A stretch of DNA of 51,473 nucleotides from the NCBI GenBank assembly GCA_013115145.1, contig JAAPAO010000220.1:1-51473 (forward strand), in the 5' to 3' direction. Shown here one piece after another: positions 44,801 through 51,473 of this stretch. The stretch's first letter is position 1; each line of letters opens with the position of its first letter. A program made the position numbers and the translations under genes. A model generated the notes under the pieces. It saw only the letters and a program-made list of their open reading frames with translations. It did not search any database and was not told where the DNA came from. Source of the stretch: Perkinsus chesapeaki ATCC PRA-425 (lineage: Eukaryota > Protista > Perkinsozoa).

Positions 44801-45289
44801 GGTGACCACCTACCAGACGTTCCGGGCTTTATCGGAGTCCATGAAGCGAATGGGCTTGTCCAAATTATGGACCTTGGAACATACATCCCCCTTCCACTCT
44901 CTCACAGTGCCATCTAGACCACAACCTGGCAGGGCAGTGTTGCCAGTAAAGGTGAGGTTGAGGATACTTACTGACAAGGTCGCCATCTGAGTTGAGGCAA
45001 AGACCGGTGACGGCATCCTCGTGCCCGAAGAGAACCGATACCAAGCTCTCTGAGCTTACACTGTATTTCAGGATCTCCCTGCCGCTGCCACAGTAAAGGA
45101 ACCTAGGACGGGTGTAAGGTACACCAGCAGACTGGGCGGGATGGCGACGGCCTACTTGCTGTCTCGGGAGAATACCGGTTTCACTTTCGAGAGATCACCG
45201 GATATGATTTCTGTACGTAACGACGGGACATCGGCAAAGTCCACCTTCTGTGGCTTCACTGATACGTCCGTCGAAGCTGCAGGGCTCAT
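41857..45289 (-). CDS. WDR75: WD40 protein WDR75/UTP17/NAN1 (t-UTP, SSU processome), multi-exon
   Basis: N-terminal GDLSKVKPVFSRDSK, GLDGTVREW, HWHCTAVKGLAF, PGVLPRI, DIQVFD..EIVPLVARNFV and C-terminal PSKLLPSLLD follow the WDR75 order (AVFSADSK, SLDGTIKLW, HWHxxxVxxLAF, FLPRLG, HLQFY, LPxxxxL). Confidence 0.75.
43564..43642 (-). other. 79-nt spliceosomal intron consisting almost entirely of a tRNA-like sequence
   Basis: GTAGTACGGTGGTTAAGG...CTGCGGGTCGAATCCCAC...CTACGCAG. Removal joins ..FTDIQ to VFDAVELRL in frame. A-box-like and B-box-like motifs sit at exact tRNA spacing (T8 to C56). Confidence 0.55.
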
Positions 45290-45333
45290 GCAACAACAAG
45301 AACAACACGACTGATGAGATAGAGGACGCTGCT

Positions 45334-45420
45334 GCCGCCGAACTCCGGTGGGGATGTCCGCGTCACGCGCCACGAAATTCCTGGGAGCGAGAGATCAAGG
45401 TTCGAATCCCACGGACGGCA
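45334..45420 (+). pseudogene. Degenerate tRNA-like element with intact B-box and T5 terminator
   Basis: Perfect GGTTCGAATCC at 45399-45409; acceptor-like pairing GCCGCCG/GGACGGC with discriminator A; TTTTT at 45425-45429; weak A-box AACTCCGGTGG. Confidence 0.5.
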
Positions 45421-45569
45421 AGTATTTTTCCTTTACCCCGCTCGAAGATCTTGGAAACTATTTTGTGCGCATTGATATAACTGAGTCAGCCAGGCGGATA
45501 AACTGTGATAAAATGAAGATATCTTTTAGACTATGCTTCTCTTTATAATTTATAACTTGTAAGTTTGAC

Positions 45570-47600
45570 GTTAATCGTGCTCCACGGGTCGTGGACTCCC
45601 AGCGCTCGGTAAAAATCGGTTCCGAAATCGAGTAGATCTTTGAATGAAACAGTCCGAATTCCACGGTGAGATGATTGGTGAATTGCAGCAGATGCAGAGG
45701 TGGGCGACTGCAATATTACTCTTACTGTAGCATATGAATGCTGCTGCACCACGCATATGGTGACATCTCATCGCGGACACCTTCGAGAGTTCCCGACGCT
45801 CATCTAGTGATACCACACTGTCAGAAAGGATTAGTCGAAGAGAAATGATTATACTTTATCGAAGGTGAGGACTAAACAGTGCGATGACAAACCTTAGTAG
45901 GATGTCGAATAACATTGCGTATTGGAGGTCGACCCCATTTGATGGACATATGGGTTGACGAGGGGGGGATGTGGATAACCTATAACTGAATTAACTGGAT
46001 AACGGGATAAGTGAAACGGGTGAAAACATCTGCACCCACTCGTGGAAATACGCCGGTTGCTCTCTGGCTGAGGCCGCTCTCTTCTACTGAGCTTCTTGGT
46101 GGTTTTTCCACGAGATAGTCTGGTATTGCATTGCCATAACAATATGCTTCAAGTCGGTGCGGGTTGCCTTGCCTGCAAGCAAGACACGGCTGCACAGGAT
46201 GAGATGGTTTTCGGAGTTCTCAAAGTCGTTCAGTCAACGCAAACCTCGCCGGTTAGAGGTGGGAGAGTCGCATGGTCAGGCTACCCCGCCGCAAAACCGG
46301 CGTGTGCCTATAGCAGCCACGATCCTCTGGCAAGGTGCTTCTTTATATCAGCCACCAAACATTTCCTAGAGTCAGGTTGAAGACGTTAGAAGAATACCTT
46401 TACTGATTCCTCTATGCCGATCTCCAGCCGACCTCATACGTGAGCCTTCGAGTTCTTGCATGGATTTTTTATAACCCAGCTTCCCGTAAACTCTCAACGG
46501 AATTTCAGGAGTAAATTTCTTGTGCCTGGGGCTCACATTGGACATTGTGTCATGATCTTCTTTTAGGAATTGTCAGCATCTACAGAGAATCCTTAATTCA
46601 CACAGTTCAGGATCAGGCATGGGCCCTCCATTCAAGCAAGGCCGATTCTAGTTAAATAATTAACATTTATAGCCTCGCCGCGTGGAGAAGGCTTCTGTAC
46701 TCCTTTCCAGGTCCTTAAAGATGGTGTTATGCTGATCAGACATGATGATTAGGGCTTACAAGAGCTGATTTAATATTGCCATACTCAATGAACTCAGTGG
46801 ACTAGTGAACAGCAGAACAATGTGCTAAGGGATTCGAGATGGTTTGCAGGTCTGAAGGATTACTTGTGTCGGAGCGTAGCTGTGCAGGCGCAGCTAGCAA
46901 TGCTAGCTGTGGCGCCGTTTCTTCAAAACACCTTGAGCAAGGACTTCGCTTTCTGCTCGTTAAAGCAGTTCCATTACGTTCTAAATTATTTCTAATGGTC
47001 CTTCATCGATAGCCACAGGGCCCTAGGGCGATGCCCACTAGTAGGTGGAATGGGATCGATCATTCTGGTGATCCATAACGTCACCTGAGCCGTCGGCCGT
47101 AAAAGGAATCCCGATTCGTACTTTAATAGGAGAAATAGAAGACACGGCAGCCAGACCCGCAAATAGGCTTGAGCTAGGAACAGAGCTCGTCTACTCAATT
47201 CCAGCTTGATCGGCTTCAGTCGATGAGAATCATATAAGTTACTAGAGCGTTACGTGACGTACGTAGCGCTGTCGAGAAGGTAAGAAACCTACTGAGTATG
47301 GCAATCACACGAAGGGTGAGATTGTCACTCAGAATGGATCTTCCGCGGCGATGAAGGGAACCAATGTGCATGAAGAGGCGACAATGCAATCAGATTCACT
47401 AGACGGTTGTTGCGATCATCCTGTGTAAGAGTCGGTTCGGAGGGCATGGATTCCGGAGGCAATCTCAAACACGTGGGTCGAAGGTAGTTCCAGGGAAGGG
47501 TCTCAGCGGGTGCGGAATTCACATGCTGACTTGATGCAATTATCCTTATTGTATCTACTAAAGGGTGCTTCACTCTATTGCGGTAGACCCGTCCTGGCTC
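45570..47600 (-). CDS. Possible multi-exon hypothetical or degraded gene
   Basis: Coding-like minus-strand segments (LNDFENSENHLILCSRVLLAGKATRTDLKHIVMAMQYQTISWKNHQEAQ; 47325-47573 ORF); not assembled into a model. Confidence 0.25.
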
Positions 47601-47889
47601 TAGTTAATCTACGAGCCGAGCTGCGGTTATATGGAGTCTAATTCCATTTTGCTTTCCATAAGCTTTGATCGGCATAAGGACCGTAAGCTAGCGTACATGG
47701 GTCAGTCTTCATACGTAACACCACTCGGCGGCCTGCGGCATAAGGACTTGAGAGTTTCGAACTCAGTTACGTGGGTTCGAAGCGATCGTCATGCATGCCG
47801 GTAAAACATGAAATGTAAAACTTTCTACACAGTGGATGTTTTGGGGCTACGGGGACTTTATTAGCACCGTGCGTTGCCACAGGTCTCCG

Positions 47890-47938
47890 CAGTGGGTATG
47901 CGTCTTCCACGCATACCCACTGAGGCATCAGTGGGTAT
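47890..47938. repeat. Three-arm palindrome: 14-bp perfect inverted repeat overlapping an 11-bp perfect inverted repeat
   Basis: CAGTGGGTATGCGT(47890-47903) cttcc ACGCATACCCACTG(47909-47922); also ATACCCACTGA ggca TCAGTGGGTAT(47928-47938). Confidence 0.92.
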
Positions 47939-48166
47939 CATGCCCATTTGATGACACCTCAGCAGCAGCCTGCTTTGTCGTGCTTTATTAGTGATGTAGG
48001 CTCACGGCCTCGCTGCAGCCTGGGAAGTACATTCCACTAACTCTCTTCGGTAACATTTACAGCTTTTACTTGTCAATTAGCAATGGGTGGCTGCTCGTTA
48101 CTGTGCTGTTGGAAATGATGAAATGCTTCATTTTTGGTGATTCAGAAGAGTTTTCCTGCAGATGTC

Positions 48167-51100
48167 ATGCACGTCGCTTTCGCGGCAGTATTGTTAGGAA
48201 TAACCCAGTCGGCGTTGACGGGATCGACAAATCGCTGGGATGAGTCTCAGGATCTTCGCAGAGCTTCGAAGATGACTCGAGAAGAGTGGCAGAGAGCTGC
48301 GAAGCACGCAGTTGGTGGGGTGTCGGAACGGTGGCACCGAGATGACGATGTTGGCCCATATTCTGGGGCATCTTACGCATTTGACAAGGAAGCAAGTAAC
48401 TTCCACTTAGATGGATCGGCGACTCAGCGGAGTGGCCAGAAGGCTATACGGGAATCTGGATTGACGAATAGATGGGATGGTGAAACAAGGTCGAAGGCAT
48501 ATGCGAACCTTGGGGAGTGGAAAGCGCCCACTGATATAGTTCAGAGTGGGAGGGATGCCACTTTCACGGACTCCAAGCCTAACGCAGATTCGGGTGACAC
48601 CGGTATTTGGACTCATCGTTCCCCACTTCCTGGATCTGGTGGCTCCAATAGCTGGGACCGTGCTCACGAGGAGAGCCTAGGGTCGACATGGAGTACGGAA
48701 GAATGGCGGAGAGCACCGCATCAGGCAACTGGTGGGAGAGAGGAAAGTTGGGGCCGAGATACCACCGAACGACGTTCTGGAGTGTCTTCTACCTTCAACA
48801 AAGAGGGAGAAGGATCTCTATTAGCTGGAACGACAACCCAGTGGGGTGCTCAGAACGTTAAGAGAACTTCTGGATTGACTGCCACTTGGAACGCCAGAAC
48901 AACGGCAAGGGCTCTCGCAGCAATCGAGGAATGGGTTGCGCCGACTTACGTAACTCGGAGTGGAAGATCAGTCACGCTTACGGGAGCGAAGGCTAGTGCC
49001 GGTAACGGTCACATCGACGCCTGGACCCATCAGTCACCGCTGTCAGAGTCAGGGCAGTCCAGTCGCTGGAGCCGCGACCGGACAGGCCGTCAGTCTTCAG
49101 TTATGAGTAGAGAAGAGTGGTGGAGAGCAGCACGGCACGTGGCTGCCGGAGCCTCGGAACTGTGGGGACGAGGTGAAATCGATCGATATTCAGGAGCGTC
49201 TTCGACCTTCAACAAGGGAAGAAGAGAATCCGAGTTGGCTGGATCCATAAATGAGTGGAACACTAACAATGAGGGAAGAGCATCTGGGTTGACGGCCACG
49301 TGGAACGCTAAAACAACAGCAATGGCTCTTGCGACACTTGAGGAATGGACCGCACCAACTCGTGTATTCAACAGCGGGAAGAGTGTCGCTTTTACTGAGA
49401 CGAAGTTTTCCGATTCCGGTGACACCAACAGCTGGATCCGTCCATCGATTCTGCCTGAGTTGGGTCACTCTAGTCGTTGGGGAAGCCCACACAAAGAAAG
49501 CCTGTCTTCAGTAACAAATGCAGAAGAATGGTGGACAGCAACACGTCAAGCTACTTCTGGCAATGAGGAGCTTTGGGACCGAAATGGCGCCGACCGATAT
49601 TCTGGAGTGTCTTCTACCTTCAACAAAGAGGGAGAAGAATCTCTATTAGCTGGAACGACAACCCAGTGGGGTGCTCAGAACGTTAAGAGAGCTTCTGGAT
49701 TGACTGCCACTTGGAACGCCAGAACAACGGCAAGGGCTCTCGCAGCAATCGAGGAATGGGTTGCGCCGACTTACGTAACTCGGAGTGGAAGATCAGTCAC
49801 GCTTACGGGAGCCAAGGCTAGTGCCGGTAACGGTCACATCGACGCCTGGACCCATCAGTCACCGCTGTCAGAGTCGGGGCACTCCAGTCGCTGGAGCCGC
49901 GACCGGACAGGCCGTCAGTCTTCAGTTATGAGTAGAGAAGAGTGGTGGAGAGCAGCACGGCACGTGGCTGCCGGAGCCTCGGAACTGTGGGGACGAGGTG
50001 AAATCAATCGATATTCAGGAGCGTCTTCGACCTTCAACAAGGGAAGAAGAGAATCCAAGTTGGCTGGATCAATAAATGAGTGGAACACTAACAATGAGGG
50101 AAGAGCATCTGGGTTGACGGCCACGTGGAACGCTAAAACAACAGCAATGGCTCTTGCGACACTTGAGGAATGGACCGCACCAACTCGTGTATTCAACAGC
50201 GGGAAGAGTGTCGCTTTTACTGAGACGAAGTTTTTCGATTCCGGTGACACCAGCAGCTGGATCCGTCCATCGATTCTGCCTGAGTTGGGTCACTCTAGTC
50301 GTTGGGGAAGCCCACACAAAGAAAGCCTGTCTTCAGTAACAAATGCAGAAGAATGGTGGACAGCAACACGTCAAGCTACTTCTGGCAATGAGGAGCTTTG
50401 GGACCGAAATGGCGCCGACCGATATTTTGGAGTGTCTTCTACCTTCAACAAAGAGGGAGAAGAATCTCTATTAGCTGGAACGACAACCCAGTGGGGTGCT
50501 CAGAACGTTAAGAGAACTTCTGGATTGACTGCCACTTGGAACGCCAGAACAACGGCAAGGGCTCTCGCAGCAATCGAGGAATGGGTTGCGCCGACTTACG
50601 TAACTCGGAGTGGAAGATCAGTCACGCTTACGGGAGCCGAGGCTAGTGCCGGTAACGGTCACATCGACGCCTGGACTCATCAGTCACCGCTGTCAGAGTC
50701 GGGGCACTCCAGTCGCTGGAGCCGCGACCGGACAGGCCGTCTGTCTTCGGTAACAGGGAAAGAAGAATGGTGGGAGGCAGCGAGTCGCGCAAATAAAGGA
50801 AAATCGAATATGTGGGAGGGACATAATATCGACTTATACTCTGGAAGAGCTGCCGTCTATCATAAGGAAACGAGCAAAACACAGCTGACCGGATCGACAA
50901 ATCAGTGGGGCACACAAGATGTTAGGAGAGCGTCAGGAACGACAGCCACTTGGAACGCCAGAGCACCAGAAATGGCCTACGCAACTCTAGAAGAGTGGAC
51001 GGCGCCTGGTGGTGTAATTCAGAGTGGAAGCTCCACTGTTTTTGCGGATGCTGGTTACGACTTTTCCGGTTCGGCAGACGAATGGCAAGATGCGTATGCA

Positions 51101-51473
51101 TATGGATTAGCGGGCTCTCAGGTTTACAGTGGAAATATTATCACTCTAATAGCGGAAGATTCTGCGTCGATTGCATCCAACGAAATCCGCGATGTGTGGC
51201 AACGACCCACTGAAACCCGATATGCCGGACGATCGCTCACGTTCGATATTCCCAATCGACATGTATCCTCAACGACTACCCCGAAAATACCAGGAGACAA
51301 GGGAGGGAGGGGGCCTGAAGTCAATACTACGTCAACAACACTCGAGTTTACTACCAGCACCACCATAACACCAACAGTGACAACGACGACAATGACGATC
51401 TCTACATCCACTGAGGAGCCTGAAATACCAGAGGACCCGCAAATCGATACTACGTCAACAACAGTCGAGTTAA
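48167..51473 (+). CDS. Intronless, putatively secreted Trp-periodic repeat protein, at least 1102 aa, open at the window end (missing from the supplied ORF track)
   Basis: ATG 48167 after acceptor-like cctgcag; MHVAFAAVLLGITQSA signal-like peptide. No stop in hand translation of the unique parts, and the frame is in register at the window end. Seven ~138-aa modules, then a Thr/Pro/Glu-rich stalk (VNTTSTTLEFTTSTTITPTVTTTTMTISTSTEEPEIPEDP). Confidence 0.9.
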   Translation, partial: MHVAFAAVLLGITQSALTGSTNRWDESQDLRRASKMTREEWQRAAKHAVGGVSERWHRDDDVGPYSGASYAFDKEASNFHLDGSATQRSGQKAIRESGLTNRWDGETRSKAYANLGEWKAPTDIVQSGRDATFTDSKPNADSGDTGIWTHRSPLPGSGGSNSWDRAHEESLGSTWSTEEWRRAPHQATGGREESWGRDTTERRSGVSSTFNKEGEGSLLAGTTTQWGAQNVKRTSGLTATWNARTTARALAAIEEWVAPTYVTRSGRSVTLTGAKASAGNGHIDAWTHQSPLSESGQSSRWSRDRTGRQSSVMSREEWWRAARHVAAGASELWGRGEIDRYSGASSTFNKGRRESELAGSINEWNTNNEGRASGLTATWNAKTTAMALATLEEWTAPTRVFNSGKSVAFTETKFSDSGDTNSWIRPSILPELGHSSRWGSPHKESLSSVTNAEEWWTATRQATSGNEELWDRNGADRYSGVSSTFNKEGEESLLAGTTTQWGAQNVKRASGLTATWNARTTARALAAIEEWVAPTYVTRSGRSVTLTGAKASAGNGHIDAWTHQSPLSESGHSSRWSRDRTGRQSSVMSREEWWRAARHVAAGASELWGRGEINRYSGASSTFNKGRRESKLAGSINEWNTNNEGRASGLTATWNAKTTAMALATLEEWTAPTRVFNSGKSVAFTETKFFDSGDTSSWIRPSILPELGHSSRWGSPHKESLSSVTNAEEWWTATRQATSGNEELWDRNGADRYFGVSSTFNKEGEESLLAGTTTQWGAQNVKRTSGLTATWNARTTARALAAIEEWVAPTYVTRSGRSVTLTGAEASAGNGHIDAWTHQSPLSESGHSSRWSRDRTGRLSSVTGKEEWWEAASRANKGKSNMWEGHNIDLYSGRAAVYHKETSKTQLTGSTNQWGTQDVRRASGTTATWNARAPEMAYATLEEWTAPGGVIQSGSSTVFADAGYDFSGSADEWQDAYAYGLAGSQVYSGNIITLIAEDSASIASNEIRDVWQRPTETRYAGRSLTFDIPNRHVSSTTTPKIPGDKGGRGPEVNTTSTTLEFTTSTTITPTVTTTTMTISTSTEEPEIPEDPQIDTTSTTVEL
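48776..50839 (+). repeat. 825-bp higher-order coding repeat (A 414 bp + B 411 bp): A-B-A-B-A
   Basis: A units start at 48776, 49601, 50426; B units at 49190, 50015; more divergent units at 48362 and 50840. Same-type copies differ at only scattered positions. Confidence 0.95.

What the first reader, a model, noticed from the sequence alone, without database searches (positions are those of the whole stretch)
48167..51473. Hidden 1100+ aa secreted protein with a 15-residue tryptophan ladder and mucin-like stalk
The ORF track lists only antisense shadows here, apparently because the real frame has no stop in the window. In module A, aromatic or hydrophobic residues fall at about F7, W23, W38, W53, L/F68, W83, W98, WW115, W130 and F145: nine ~15-aa turns per 138-aa module. 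Most are preceded by (S/A)G-x4 (SGVSSTF, AGTTTQW, SGLTATW, SGKSVAF, SGDTNSW, SGQSSRW, AGASELW). This Ser/Thr/Gly-rich periodicity suggests a beta-solenoid with a stacked Trp ladder, a plausible glycan-binding or self-assembling surface, displayed on a Thr-rich stalk behind a signal peptide. It is intronless in an intron-dense genome. I do not recognise the repeat family; the fold and function are inference.
Basis: partly seen in the sequence, partly recalled or inferred. Interest (0 to 1): 0.85.

Follow-up and report, generated by a model that had tools for sequence, protein, structure and literature searches.

The report
Orphan tryptophan-repeat surface protein gene
A shellfish parasite (Perkinsus chesapeaki) carries a real gene, with no detectable relatives, for a large and probably secreted protein in which a tryptophan recurs every 15 residues 63 times ahead of a threonine-rich stalk; its shape and job remain unknown.

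Summary
Window 48167-51473(+) is one open frame of 1102 codons that runs off the contig end.

- **Start:** a 10-residue hydrophobic, signal-peptide-like stretch.
- **Head:** seven tandem modules of 137-139 aa. Each holds nine 15-16-aa sub-repeats with consensus S-G-x-[ST]-x-x-W.
- **Stalk:** a Thr-rich 41-aa tandem unit follows. DNA runs show it continues past the contig end at 15-51 times single-copy depth.

The Trp periodicity beats all but 6 of 1000 shuffles within every single module. Module types differ with dN/dS 0.2-0.5 and almost no indels.

The gene is not fully "hidden". GenBank annotates it as hypothetical protein FOL47_003792 (Perkinsus chesapeaki), but the model is truncated by a 53-nt intron that is probably an artefact.

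No relatives appeared in 1.84 billion representative proteins, PDB, Pfam, NCBIfam, metagenome contigs or prokaryote genomes. A Pfam Slp hit is sub-threshold per module and has no BLASTP support.

AlphaFold2 gave no confident fold (pLDDT 32-40), so the beta-solenoid idea is neither supported nor excluded. No RNA run holding the gene was listed, so expression is untested.

Verdict: a lineage-restricted, mucin-stalked surface or secreted repeat protein with a new repeat type. The scan had not noted it on other DNA.

The parts
48167..48211 (+). Start codon and signal-peptide-like N-terminus (aa 1-15). The hydrophobic core is VAFAAVLLGI; small residues at -3/-1 (T, S) precede aa 16.
   Evidence: the 9-residue Kyte-Doolittle mean reaches 2.68. 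No signal-peptide predictor was available, so the cleavage site is inferred.
48212..48271 (+). Short lead-in (aa 16-35) holding one extra G-x4-W unit (TGSTNRW).
48272..48688 (+). Module 1 (aa 36-174), the most divergent N-terminal copy.
48689..49102 (+). Module 2 (aa 175-312), type A.
49103..49513 (+). Module 3 (aa 313-449), type B.
49514..49927 (+). Module 4 (aa 450-587), type A. Modules 2+3 and 4+5 form an 825-nt super-repeat that differs at 39 nt.
   Evidence: (lag 275 aa).
49928..50338 (+). Module 5 (aa 588-724), type B, 97% identical to module 3.
50339..50752 (+). Module 6 (aa 725-862), type A.
50753..51166 (+). Module 7 (aa 863-1000), a divergent last copy whose final sub-repeat has decayed.
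51070..51122 (+). The 53-nt GT..AG 'intron' of the GenBank model FOL47_003792, probably not real. It removes the conserved SGSADEW sub-repeat of module 7 and shifts the frame to a stop at 51211-51213.
   Evidence: plus the alignment.
51167..51265 (+). Linker (aa 1001-1033) with one more Trp (W1011) and a degenerate AGRSLTF unit.
51266..51473 (+). Thr-rich mucin-like stalk (aa 1034-1102). The 123-nt / 41-aa tandem unit runs 51318-51440 and its next copy starts at 51441. The array continues in frame beyond the contig end.
   Evidence: 123-nt spacing; depth is 15-51 times the flank in four DNA runs; a loose end after 51471 reads TACTACCAGCAC, which is the continuation seen at 51349-51361.

Best explanation
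This is a real, lineage-restricted (orphan) gene of Perkinsus chesapeaki for a very large secreted or surface-anchored glycoprotein.

**Shown**
- An uninterrupted frame of at least 1102 codons.
- A hydrophobic N-terminus.
- A Cys-free head of about 965 aa: seven tandem 138-aa modules, each holding nine 15-16-residue units with consensus S-G-x-[ST]-x-x-W. That makes 63 units, with an aromatic residue in register in nearly all of them.
- A Thr-rich 41-aa tandem repeat that runs off the contig and is present at many copies.

**Inferred**
- The N-terminus is a cleaved signal peptide.
- The Thr-rich array is O-glycosylated and works as a stiff mucin-type stalk, holding the head away from the cell surface or wall.
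- The head is a regular extended repeat structure, one structural turn or hairpin per 15-16 residues, presenting a line of Trp side chains. This rests on unit length being kept almost without indels between module types whose synonymous sites are saturated.
- The Trp array acts as a multivalent binding surface, most plausibly for carbohydrate (host glycans or the parasite's own wall polymer) or for self-association.

Whether the regular structure is a closed beta-solenoid is not shown.
For: **Gene and repeat**
- Open frame and composition: (no Cys; 55 W, 136 S, 133 T).
- Module and sub-repeat anatomy.
- Periodicity beats shuffles in the whole head and inside each module type.
- Purifying selection between module types: dN/dS 0.18-0.52 with dS of 1.0 or more.
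- Only two single-residue gaps separate the modules before the decayed end of module 7.

**Secretion**
- Hydrophobic N-terminus.
- The head has no N-x-S/T sequon, against 5.2 expected (P = 0.003; reverse control [ST]xN = 10). This fits passage through the ER. It is a post-hoc observation.

**Stalk**
- 41-aa unit, 43% Ser+Thr, acidic.
- It continues in frame past the contig end and has 15-51 times the flank depth in four DNA runs from two studies.
- Depth over the A and B modules is compatible with the assembled three and two copies.

**Orphan status**
- Only the protein itself was found: with a 7-module profile against 1.84 billion representatives, by word search, and in metagenome and prokaryote contigs.

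**Context**
- Species-specific recognition of Perkinsus surfaces by host galectins is documented. MaGal1 binds P. chesapeaki strongly; CvGal1 and CvGal2 bind it weakly (PMC7053492).
- Unchecked scan notes list other mucin-stalk surface proteins in this genome.
Against: - No expression evidence. No RNA run holding the stretch was listed, and the two small RNA-type runs of the species held next to none of its words.
- The signal peptide was not scored by a dedicated predictor. It lacks a basic n-region, and an upstream exon cannot be excluded: a pyrimidine-rich stretch ending in cag sits 5 nt before the ATG.
- The C-terminus, and therefore any TM segment or GPI anchor, is off the contig.
- AlphaFold2 gives no confident fold.
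- Each unit has one hydrophobic position only.
- The charge-hydropathy plot is borderline disordered.
- The protein language model barely recognises the sequence: recognition 1024, below the level that most real families reach.
- The high depth of the tail unit could partly come from other genes.
Confidence: 0.55

Rival explanations
1. Each 15-residue unit is one coil of a beta-solenoid, so the Trp residues stack into a continuous ladder. It would resemble the Tyr ladder of the 16-residue coils of bacterial ice nucleation proteins, forming a flat glycan-, ice- or self-binding face.
For: - The 15-16-residue period is very regular and has no insertions.
- Gly is conserved 5 residues before the aromatic, as a turn residue would be.
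- The composition is rich in Ser, Thr, Gly and Ala.
- Ice nucleation proteins show that a polar 16-residue unit with one aromatic can be modelled as a solenoid (PMC9418140 and PMC10727499).
- AlphaFold2 put a short beta-meander with a period of about 15-17 residues and pLDDT of about 60 in the second half of type A modules.
Against: - AlphaFold2 predicted no solenoid and had low confidence overall.
- Only one strongly hydrophobic position per unit, and 22% charged residues.
- The nine units of a module differ greatly in their second halves.
- Hydropathy shows no period-2 signal.
- No Pfam ice-nucleation or other solenoid family hit at E of 1 or below.
Confidence: 0.2
2. The head is intrinsically disordered. 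The evenly spaced Trp, together with many Arg, act as 'stickers' in a polar 'spacer' chain. They would drive multivalent weak binding or condensation into an extracellular matrix or wall layer.
For: - Very low AlphaFold2 confidence with and without the module alignment.
- Borderline-disordered charge-hydropathy values: H 0.410 against a boundary of 0.414.
- One aromatic per 15 polar residues; 86 Arg and 55 Trp.
- Low language-model recognition.
Against: - Unit length and register are kept almost without indels between modules that are only 39-54% identical and have saturated synonymous sites. This is unusual for disordered regions.
- The Gly at -5 and the Ser/Thr at -3 are conserved as well as the Trp.
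Confidence: 0.3
3. The frame is not a working gene. It would be a recently expanded repeat that is unexpressed or decaying, or is partly an assembly product.
For: - No RNA run holding it was listed.
- No orthologue was detected anywhere.
- The 825-nt super-repeat copies are nearly identical, and short-read contigs break inside them.
Against: - 1102 codons without a stop, while every other frame is closed within 112 aa.
- dN/dS well below 1 between the old module types.
- Selective conservation of W and G.
- The locus is present in DNA runs of two separate studies, with depth compatible with the assembled copy numbers.
Confidence: 0.08
4. It is an intracellular GW/WG-type 'Ago hook' protein. 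Its spaced Trp residues would dock into Argonaute pockets.
For: Many Trp residues sit in a polar context rich in Ser, Thr and Gly, and 9 of them are followed by Gly.
Against: - No GW dipeptide; only 9 WG among 55 Trp. Glu or Arg most often precede the Trp.
- Hydrophobic N-terminus.
- A Thr-rich mucin-like tandem tail.
- Sequon depletion, which suggests ER transit.
Confidence: 0.03
5. The modules are diverged copies of the bacterial Slp outer-membrane lipoprotein domain (Pfam PF03843).
For: The whole protein scores 47.1 bits, E 2.1e-12, in three stretches. The hit region coincides with the beta-meander AlphaFold2 drew at pLDDT of about 60.
Against: - A single type A module scores 18.8 bits, below the 22.5-bit cut-off. 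The total comes from three near-identical copies.
- Type B, module 1 and module 7 do not hit.
- BLASTP with E. coli Slp gives E 5.8.
- The protein has no Cys, so no lipobox.
- The module profile found no Slp protein among 1.84 billion representatives.
Confidence: 0.03

Closest known systems
Mucin-stalk surface adhesins of microbial eukaryotes (for example fungal Als/Flo/Epa-type adhesins and Cryptosporidium gp900-type mucins; comparison from general knowledge)
   Same: The order of parts matches: signal-like N-terminus, a distinct N-terminal 'head', then a long Ser/Thr-rich tandem-repeat stalk.
   Different: The head is a Cys-free array of 15-residue Trp units with no sequence relative. The C-terminal anchor is unknown because the contig ends. 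There is no homology to any of these families.
Bacterial ice nucleation proteins: 16-residue repeats modelled as a beta-solenoid with Thr arrays and a Tyr ladder (PMC9418140, PMC10727499)
   Same: Short polar repeats of 15-16 residues rich in Ser, Thr, Gly and Ala, with one aromatic in register per unit, grouped into a higher-order period.
   Different: - The consensus differs: S-G-x-[ST]-x-x-W against the AGYGSTxTA-type unit.
- There are no TxT arrays.
- The nine units of a module differ strongly from one another.
- No Pfam hit.
- AlphaFold2 did not predict a solenoid here.
- This is a eukaryotic secreted protein with a mucin stalk.
Thrombospondin type 1 repeat (TSR) Trp-Arg ladder of apicomplexan adhesins
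   Same: An extracellular parasite protein in which Trp and Arg are prominent.
   Different: There is no WxxW motif and no Cys. The Trp residues are 15 residues apart, not 3. No Pfam TSP_1 hit.
Aromatic-rich beta-hairpin repeats that bind cell-wall ligands (choline-binding or clostridial-toxin-type ~20-residue repeats; comparison from general knowledge)
   Same: Short tandem units with a conserved Gly and an aromatic, which together build multivalent ligand sites.
   Different: Unit length is 15-16 rather than about 20 residues, the consensus differs, and there is no Pfam CW_binding hit.

Membership tests
Slp outer-membrane lipoprotein family (PF03843) | A domain score at or above Pfam's gathering cut-off (22.5 bits) from independent sequence | tested here: not met
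   A single type A module scores 18.8 bits, E 0.0011. Modules 1, 3 and 7 give no hit. The 47.1 bits for the whole protein is the sum of three near-identical copies.
Slp outer-membrane lipoprotein family (PF03843) | An N-terminal lipobox Cys and pairwise similarity to a bona fide Slp | tested here: not met
   There is no Cys in 1102 aa. BLASTP with E. coli K-12 Slp gives E 5.8.
Ice nucleation protein repeat / beta-solenoid | A match to the family profile, and the 16-residue AGYGSTxTA-type unit | tested here: not met
   No Pfam hit at E of 1 or below. The unit consensus here is S-G-x-[ST]-x-x-W.
Ice nucleation protein repeat / beta-solenoid | A solenoid fold with stacked aromatics | tested here: inconclusive
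   AlphaFold2 pLDDT was 39.9 and 31.6, and no solenoid was drawn. The alignment depth, 1 and 7 rows, is too low for a verdict.
Thrombospondin type 1 repeat | A WxxW(xxW) motif and conserved Cys | tested here: not met
   No W-x-x-W/C motif; no Cys.
GW/WG Argonaute-binding ('Ago hook') proteins | Many GW or WG dipeptides in a non-secreted disordered region | tested here: not met
   0 GW and 9 WG among 55 Trp. The N-terminus is hydrophobic and the tail is mucin-like.
Mucin-stalk surface or secreted glycoprotein (an architecture, not a homology family) | A Ser/Thr-rich tandem-repeat region | tested here: met
   The tail is 43% Ser+Thr and has a 123-nt / 41-aa unit. It continues past the contig end with 15-51 times the flank depth.
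Mucin-stalk surface or secreted glycoprotein (an architecture, not a homology family) | A cleavable signal peptide | tested here: inconclusive
   A 10-residue hydrophobic core at aa 3-12 is followed by T-Q-S. Sequon depletion fits ER transit. No dedicated predictor and no transcript 5' end were available.
Mucin-stalk surface or secreted glycoprotein (an architecture, not a homology family) | A C-terminal membrane or GPI anchor, and actual O-glycosylation | not testable with these tools
   The window is the whole contig and the frame runs off its end.

The most novel reading that the evidence does not exclude
The 15-16-residue S-G-x-[ST]-x-x-W unit defines a previously unseen structural repeat class. 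It would be a Cys-free, Trp-stacked solenoid or ribbon that a perkinsid parasite displays on a mucin stalk as a multivalent glycan-binding or self-assembling surface. It might contribute to the species-specific host recognition seen between Perkinsus species.
Probability: 0.2. Interest if true: 0.7.

Novelty: new variant of a known kind. Interest (0 to 1): 0.42.

Why it matters
Perkinsus parasites damage shellfish stocks. Their entry into host haemocytes depends on recognition of parasite surface glycans by host galectins, and that recognition differs between P. marinus and P. chesapeaki (PMC7053492). A species-restricted, heavily Thr-rich surface protein is a candidate carrier of such glycans.

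Its head is a very regular Trp array with no relative in about 1.8 billion representative proteins. If the head is folded, it would add a new repeat architecture for structural biology.

On the practical side, the public gene model is probably truncated by a spurious intron placed at a contig end. This kind of annotation error is likely to affect other repeat genes in this assembly.

Tried and rejected
**Family and homology searches**
- Pfam on the whole protein gave only Slp plus sub-threshold noise: HTH_1, RHS_repeat, DUF6617.
- Slp was rejected after the per-module scan and BLASTP with E. coli Slp.
- NCBIfam gave nothing.
- PDB sequence searches with the protein and with the module profile gave nothing better than E 9.
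- The module profile against 1.84 billion representatives found only the protein itself.
- Word-index searches with the head, with the tail inside the full length, and with the tail alone found only the protein itself or nothing.
- ESM Atlas features: best score 0.60, recognition 1024, no lead.
- Back-translated pattern scans of metagenome and prokaryote genome contigs found no relative.
- tblastn of modules and tail against the rest of the window found no paralogue.

**Structure**
- AlphaFold2 was run twice with low confidence. Fold searches were therefore not run, since matches of such models are meaningless.
- A two-module alignment meant to deepen the input (A2) came out staggered by MAFFT and was not used.

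**Reads**
- RNA runs: none holding the stretch was listed.
- The four runs laid were DNA-like, with flat depth across the intergenic DNA, so they say nothing about splicing.

**Other**
- Tandem Repeats Finder found nothing because the period exceeds 500 nt.
- Rfam and tRNA scans of the upstream 2.9 kb were empty.
- Literature searches for a Trp-periodic secreted repeat or a Perkinsus wall or mucin protein found nothing pertinent.
Full report
**Where we are.** The window is a complete contig, JAAPAO010000220.1 (51,473 bp), of the Perkinsus chesapeaki assembly GCA_013115145.1. Earlier scan notes on the genome also name Perkinsus. P. chesapeaki is a protist parasite of clams and oysters.

**The observation.**
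- Translating 48167-51473 in frame +1 gives 1102 codons with no stop. The nearest in-frame stop upstream is at 48119-48121.
- The mechanical ORF list holds only short ORFs here, at most 112 aa, because the real frame has no stop before the contig ends.
- The protein has no Cys and is rich in Ser (136), Thr (133), Ala (121), Gly (103), Arg (86), Glu (85) and Trp (55).
- Self-comparison shows a 275-aa super-repeat and a 137-138-aa repeat.
- Seven modules (aa 36-1000) align with two single-residue gaps until the decayed end of module 7. The invariant columns are dominated by W and G.
- Aromatic residues occupy alignment columns 6, 21, 37, 53, 68, 83, 98, 113 and 128, which makes nine units of 15-16 residues per module. 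A Gly lies five residues upstream of seven of them.
- Over the 36 units of the four distinct module types the consensus is S(-6) G(-5) x [S/T](-3) x x W(0). The eight residues after the Trp are variable and polar or charged.
- The spectral power of Trp at period 15.3 is 2.48, against a maximum of 0.58 in 2000 shuffles. Inside each single module type, only 0-6 of 1000 shuffles reach the observed value.

**Is it a gene?**
- The four old module types (1, A, B, 7) differ at 46-61% of residues, and their synonymous sites are saturated (dS 1.0-3.5). dN/dS is 0.18-0.52, so the frame has evolved under protein-level constraint.
- The three 825-nt super-repeats are recent: copies 1 and 2 differ at 39 nt.
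- Four DNA-type runs from two studies hold the locus.
- Their contig depth over type B modules is about 1.6 times the flank. Over type A modules it is about 2.5 times the flank. This is compatible with the two and three assembled copies, although the tool warns that summed word depth is not a copy number.

**The existing annotation.** The gene is not wholly hidden. GenBank has hypothetical protein FOL47_003792, 997 aa, identical to the frame for 968 aa. The model then removes 53 nt (51070-51122, GT..AG) and ends after 29 unrelated, Cys-containing residues at a stop at 51211-51213.

That intron deletes the SGSADEW unit of module 7, which aligns with SGDTNSW and its counterparts in the other modules. 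The unspliced frame stays open to the contig end. I read the intron as an artefact of needing a stop near a contig end. RNA evidence would settle this, and none was available.

**The two ends.**
- *N-terminus.* Residues 3-12 (VAFAAVLLGI) form a hydrophobic core with a 9-residue hydropathy mean of up to 2.68. A polar T-Q-S-A-L-T-G stretch follows, with small residues that fit the -3/-1 rule before residue 16. This looks like a short signal peptide, but no predictor was at hand.
- *Possible upstream exon.* A pyrimidine-rich stretch ending in cag lies just before the ATG, so an upstream exon cannot be excluded.
- *Post-hoc support for ER transit.* The non-redundant head has 24 Asn and 127 Ser/Thr but no N-x-S/T sequon. 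Shuffles give a mean of 5.2 and P = 0.003, while the reversed pattern occurs 10 times.
- *C-terminal part.* After a 33-aa linker comes a Thr-rich, acidic region that is 43% Ser+Thr. It contains a 123-nt (41-aa) direct repeat at 51318 and 51441.
- *Continuation past the contig.* Contig depth over 51284-51473 is 15-51 times the single-copy flank in four DNA runs. A contig running past 51471 continues with TACTACCAGCAC, the sequence that follows the first copy, which keeps the frame (…E-F-T-T-S-T). A contig entering at 51324 carries the end of the preceding unit.
- *Meaning.* The stalk is a tandem array of probably a dozen or more units, which explains why the contig ends here. The stop codon and any membrane or GPI anchor are unknown.

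**What is it related to?** Nothing detectable.
- Pfam lists only Slp at 47.1 bits in three stretches. One type A module alone scores 18.8 bits, below the 22.5 cut-off, and the other module types do not hit.
- E. coli Slp gives BLASTP E 5.8, and the protein has no Cys for a lipobox. The Slp name, which is also precomputed for the GenBank protein, is therefore a summed chance or compositional match.
- NCBIfam, PDB sequences, the ESM Atlas, metagenome and prokaryote contigs and the rest of the window gave nothing.
- A profile of the seven modules read against 1.84 billion representative proteins returned only the protein itself.
- Word searches with the tail found no protein sharing the stalk unit.
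- Predicted proteomes of other organisms therefore hold no recognisable relative. Unannotated copies in other Perkinsus genomes could not be searched with these tools.

**Fold.**
- AlphaFold2 on three modules without an alignment gave mean pLDDT 39.9 (pTM 0.20). It drew long low-confidence helices and, in the second half of each type A module, a four-strand meander at pLDDT of about 60.
- One module with the seven-module alignment gave pLDDT 31.6 and almost no secondary structure.
- The charge-hydropathy plot sits on the order/disorder boundary: H 0.410 against 0.414.
- Each unit has a single strongly hydrophobic position, and hydropathy has no period-2 or period-3.6 signal.

These results do not support the Trp-stacked beta-solenoid. 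They are weak tests for an orphan, however.

In the other direction, strict retention of the 15-16-residue register, of Gly at -5 and of Ser/Thr at -3, across modules that are only 39-54% identical, is more typical of a structural repeat than of a disordered chain. Bacterial ice nucleation proteins show that polar 16-residue units with one aromatic can be modelled as a solenoid with an aromatic ladder (PMC9418140, PMC10727499). That is a resemblance only: the consensus differs and the Pfam model does not hit.

My estimates for the head are:
- a true Trp-stacked solenoid, about 0.2;
- a disordered sticker-spacer chain, about 0.3;
- some other regular structure, the remainder.

**Function.** This part is inference. 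The order signal peptide, repeat head, Thr-rich tandem stalk is the usual plan of mucin-type surface or wall proteins. Unchecked scan notes list other mucin-stalk proteins in this genome.

An array of 63 exposed or semi-exposed Trp residues with many Arg suits multivalent binding of carbohydrate, or self-association. The stalk would carry O-glycans. Host galectins distinguish P. chesapeaki from P. marinus by surface glycans (PMC7053492), so a species-restricted mucin is a reasonable candidate ligand carrier. Nothing here tests that.

**Expression.** This is untested. No RNA run holding the stretch was listed, and two small RNA-type runs with the species label held next to none of its words.

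**Verdict.** This is a real, orphan, probably secreted repeat protein with a new short repeat type on a known kind of architecture. It is moderately interesting. It would be more so if the head proves to be a folded Trp ladder, or if the protein turns out to be a surface determinant of host recognition.

Noticed in passing
window 51070-51122 and 51211-51213: The GenBank model FOL47_003792 ends through a 53-nt GT..AG intron that removes a conserved sub-repeat and reaches a stop in another frame. It is probably an artefact of gene calling at a contig end. Other repeat genes at contig ends in this assembly may be truncated in the same way.
   Followed up: partly
window 48224-49513 and 50753-51166 (non-redundant head, aa 20-449 and 863-1000): There is no N-x-S/T glycosylation sequon, although the stretch has 24 Asn and 127 Ser/Thr. 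Shuffles expect 5.2 (P = 0.003), and the reversed pattern occurs 10 times. This suggests selection against N-glycans on the head.
   Followed up: yes
window 47887-47925 (and 47929-47938): A 17-nt hairpin palindrome (CCGCAGTGGGTATGCGT / ACGCATACCCACTGAGG, 5 nt apart) is followed by a third partial copy of CAGTGGGTAT, about 240 nt upstream of the ATG. It resembles the hairpin 'scars' that another note describes in this genome's intergenic DNA.
   Followed up: no
window 48084-48121: A short upstream ORF (MGGCSLLCCWK, then two stops) lies 46 nt before the main ATG. A pyrimidine-rich stretch ending in cag sits at 48151-48161, so an upstream exon or a uORF in the leader is possible.
   Followed up: no
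window 49246, 49691, 49813, 49845-49907, 51394-51415: Single-base differences separate the two sequenced samples. One example is 49246 C>A, seen in all three runs of one sample. Two variant contigs cover 49815-49937. These are strain or allele variation, or differences between repeat copies.
   Followed up: no
window 47773-47784: A GGGTTCGAAGCG stretch resembles a tRNA B box. ARAGORN and Rfam find no tRNA or other RNA family in 45300-48200 (ARAGORN: 45000-48300).
   Followed up: partly
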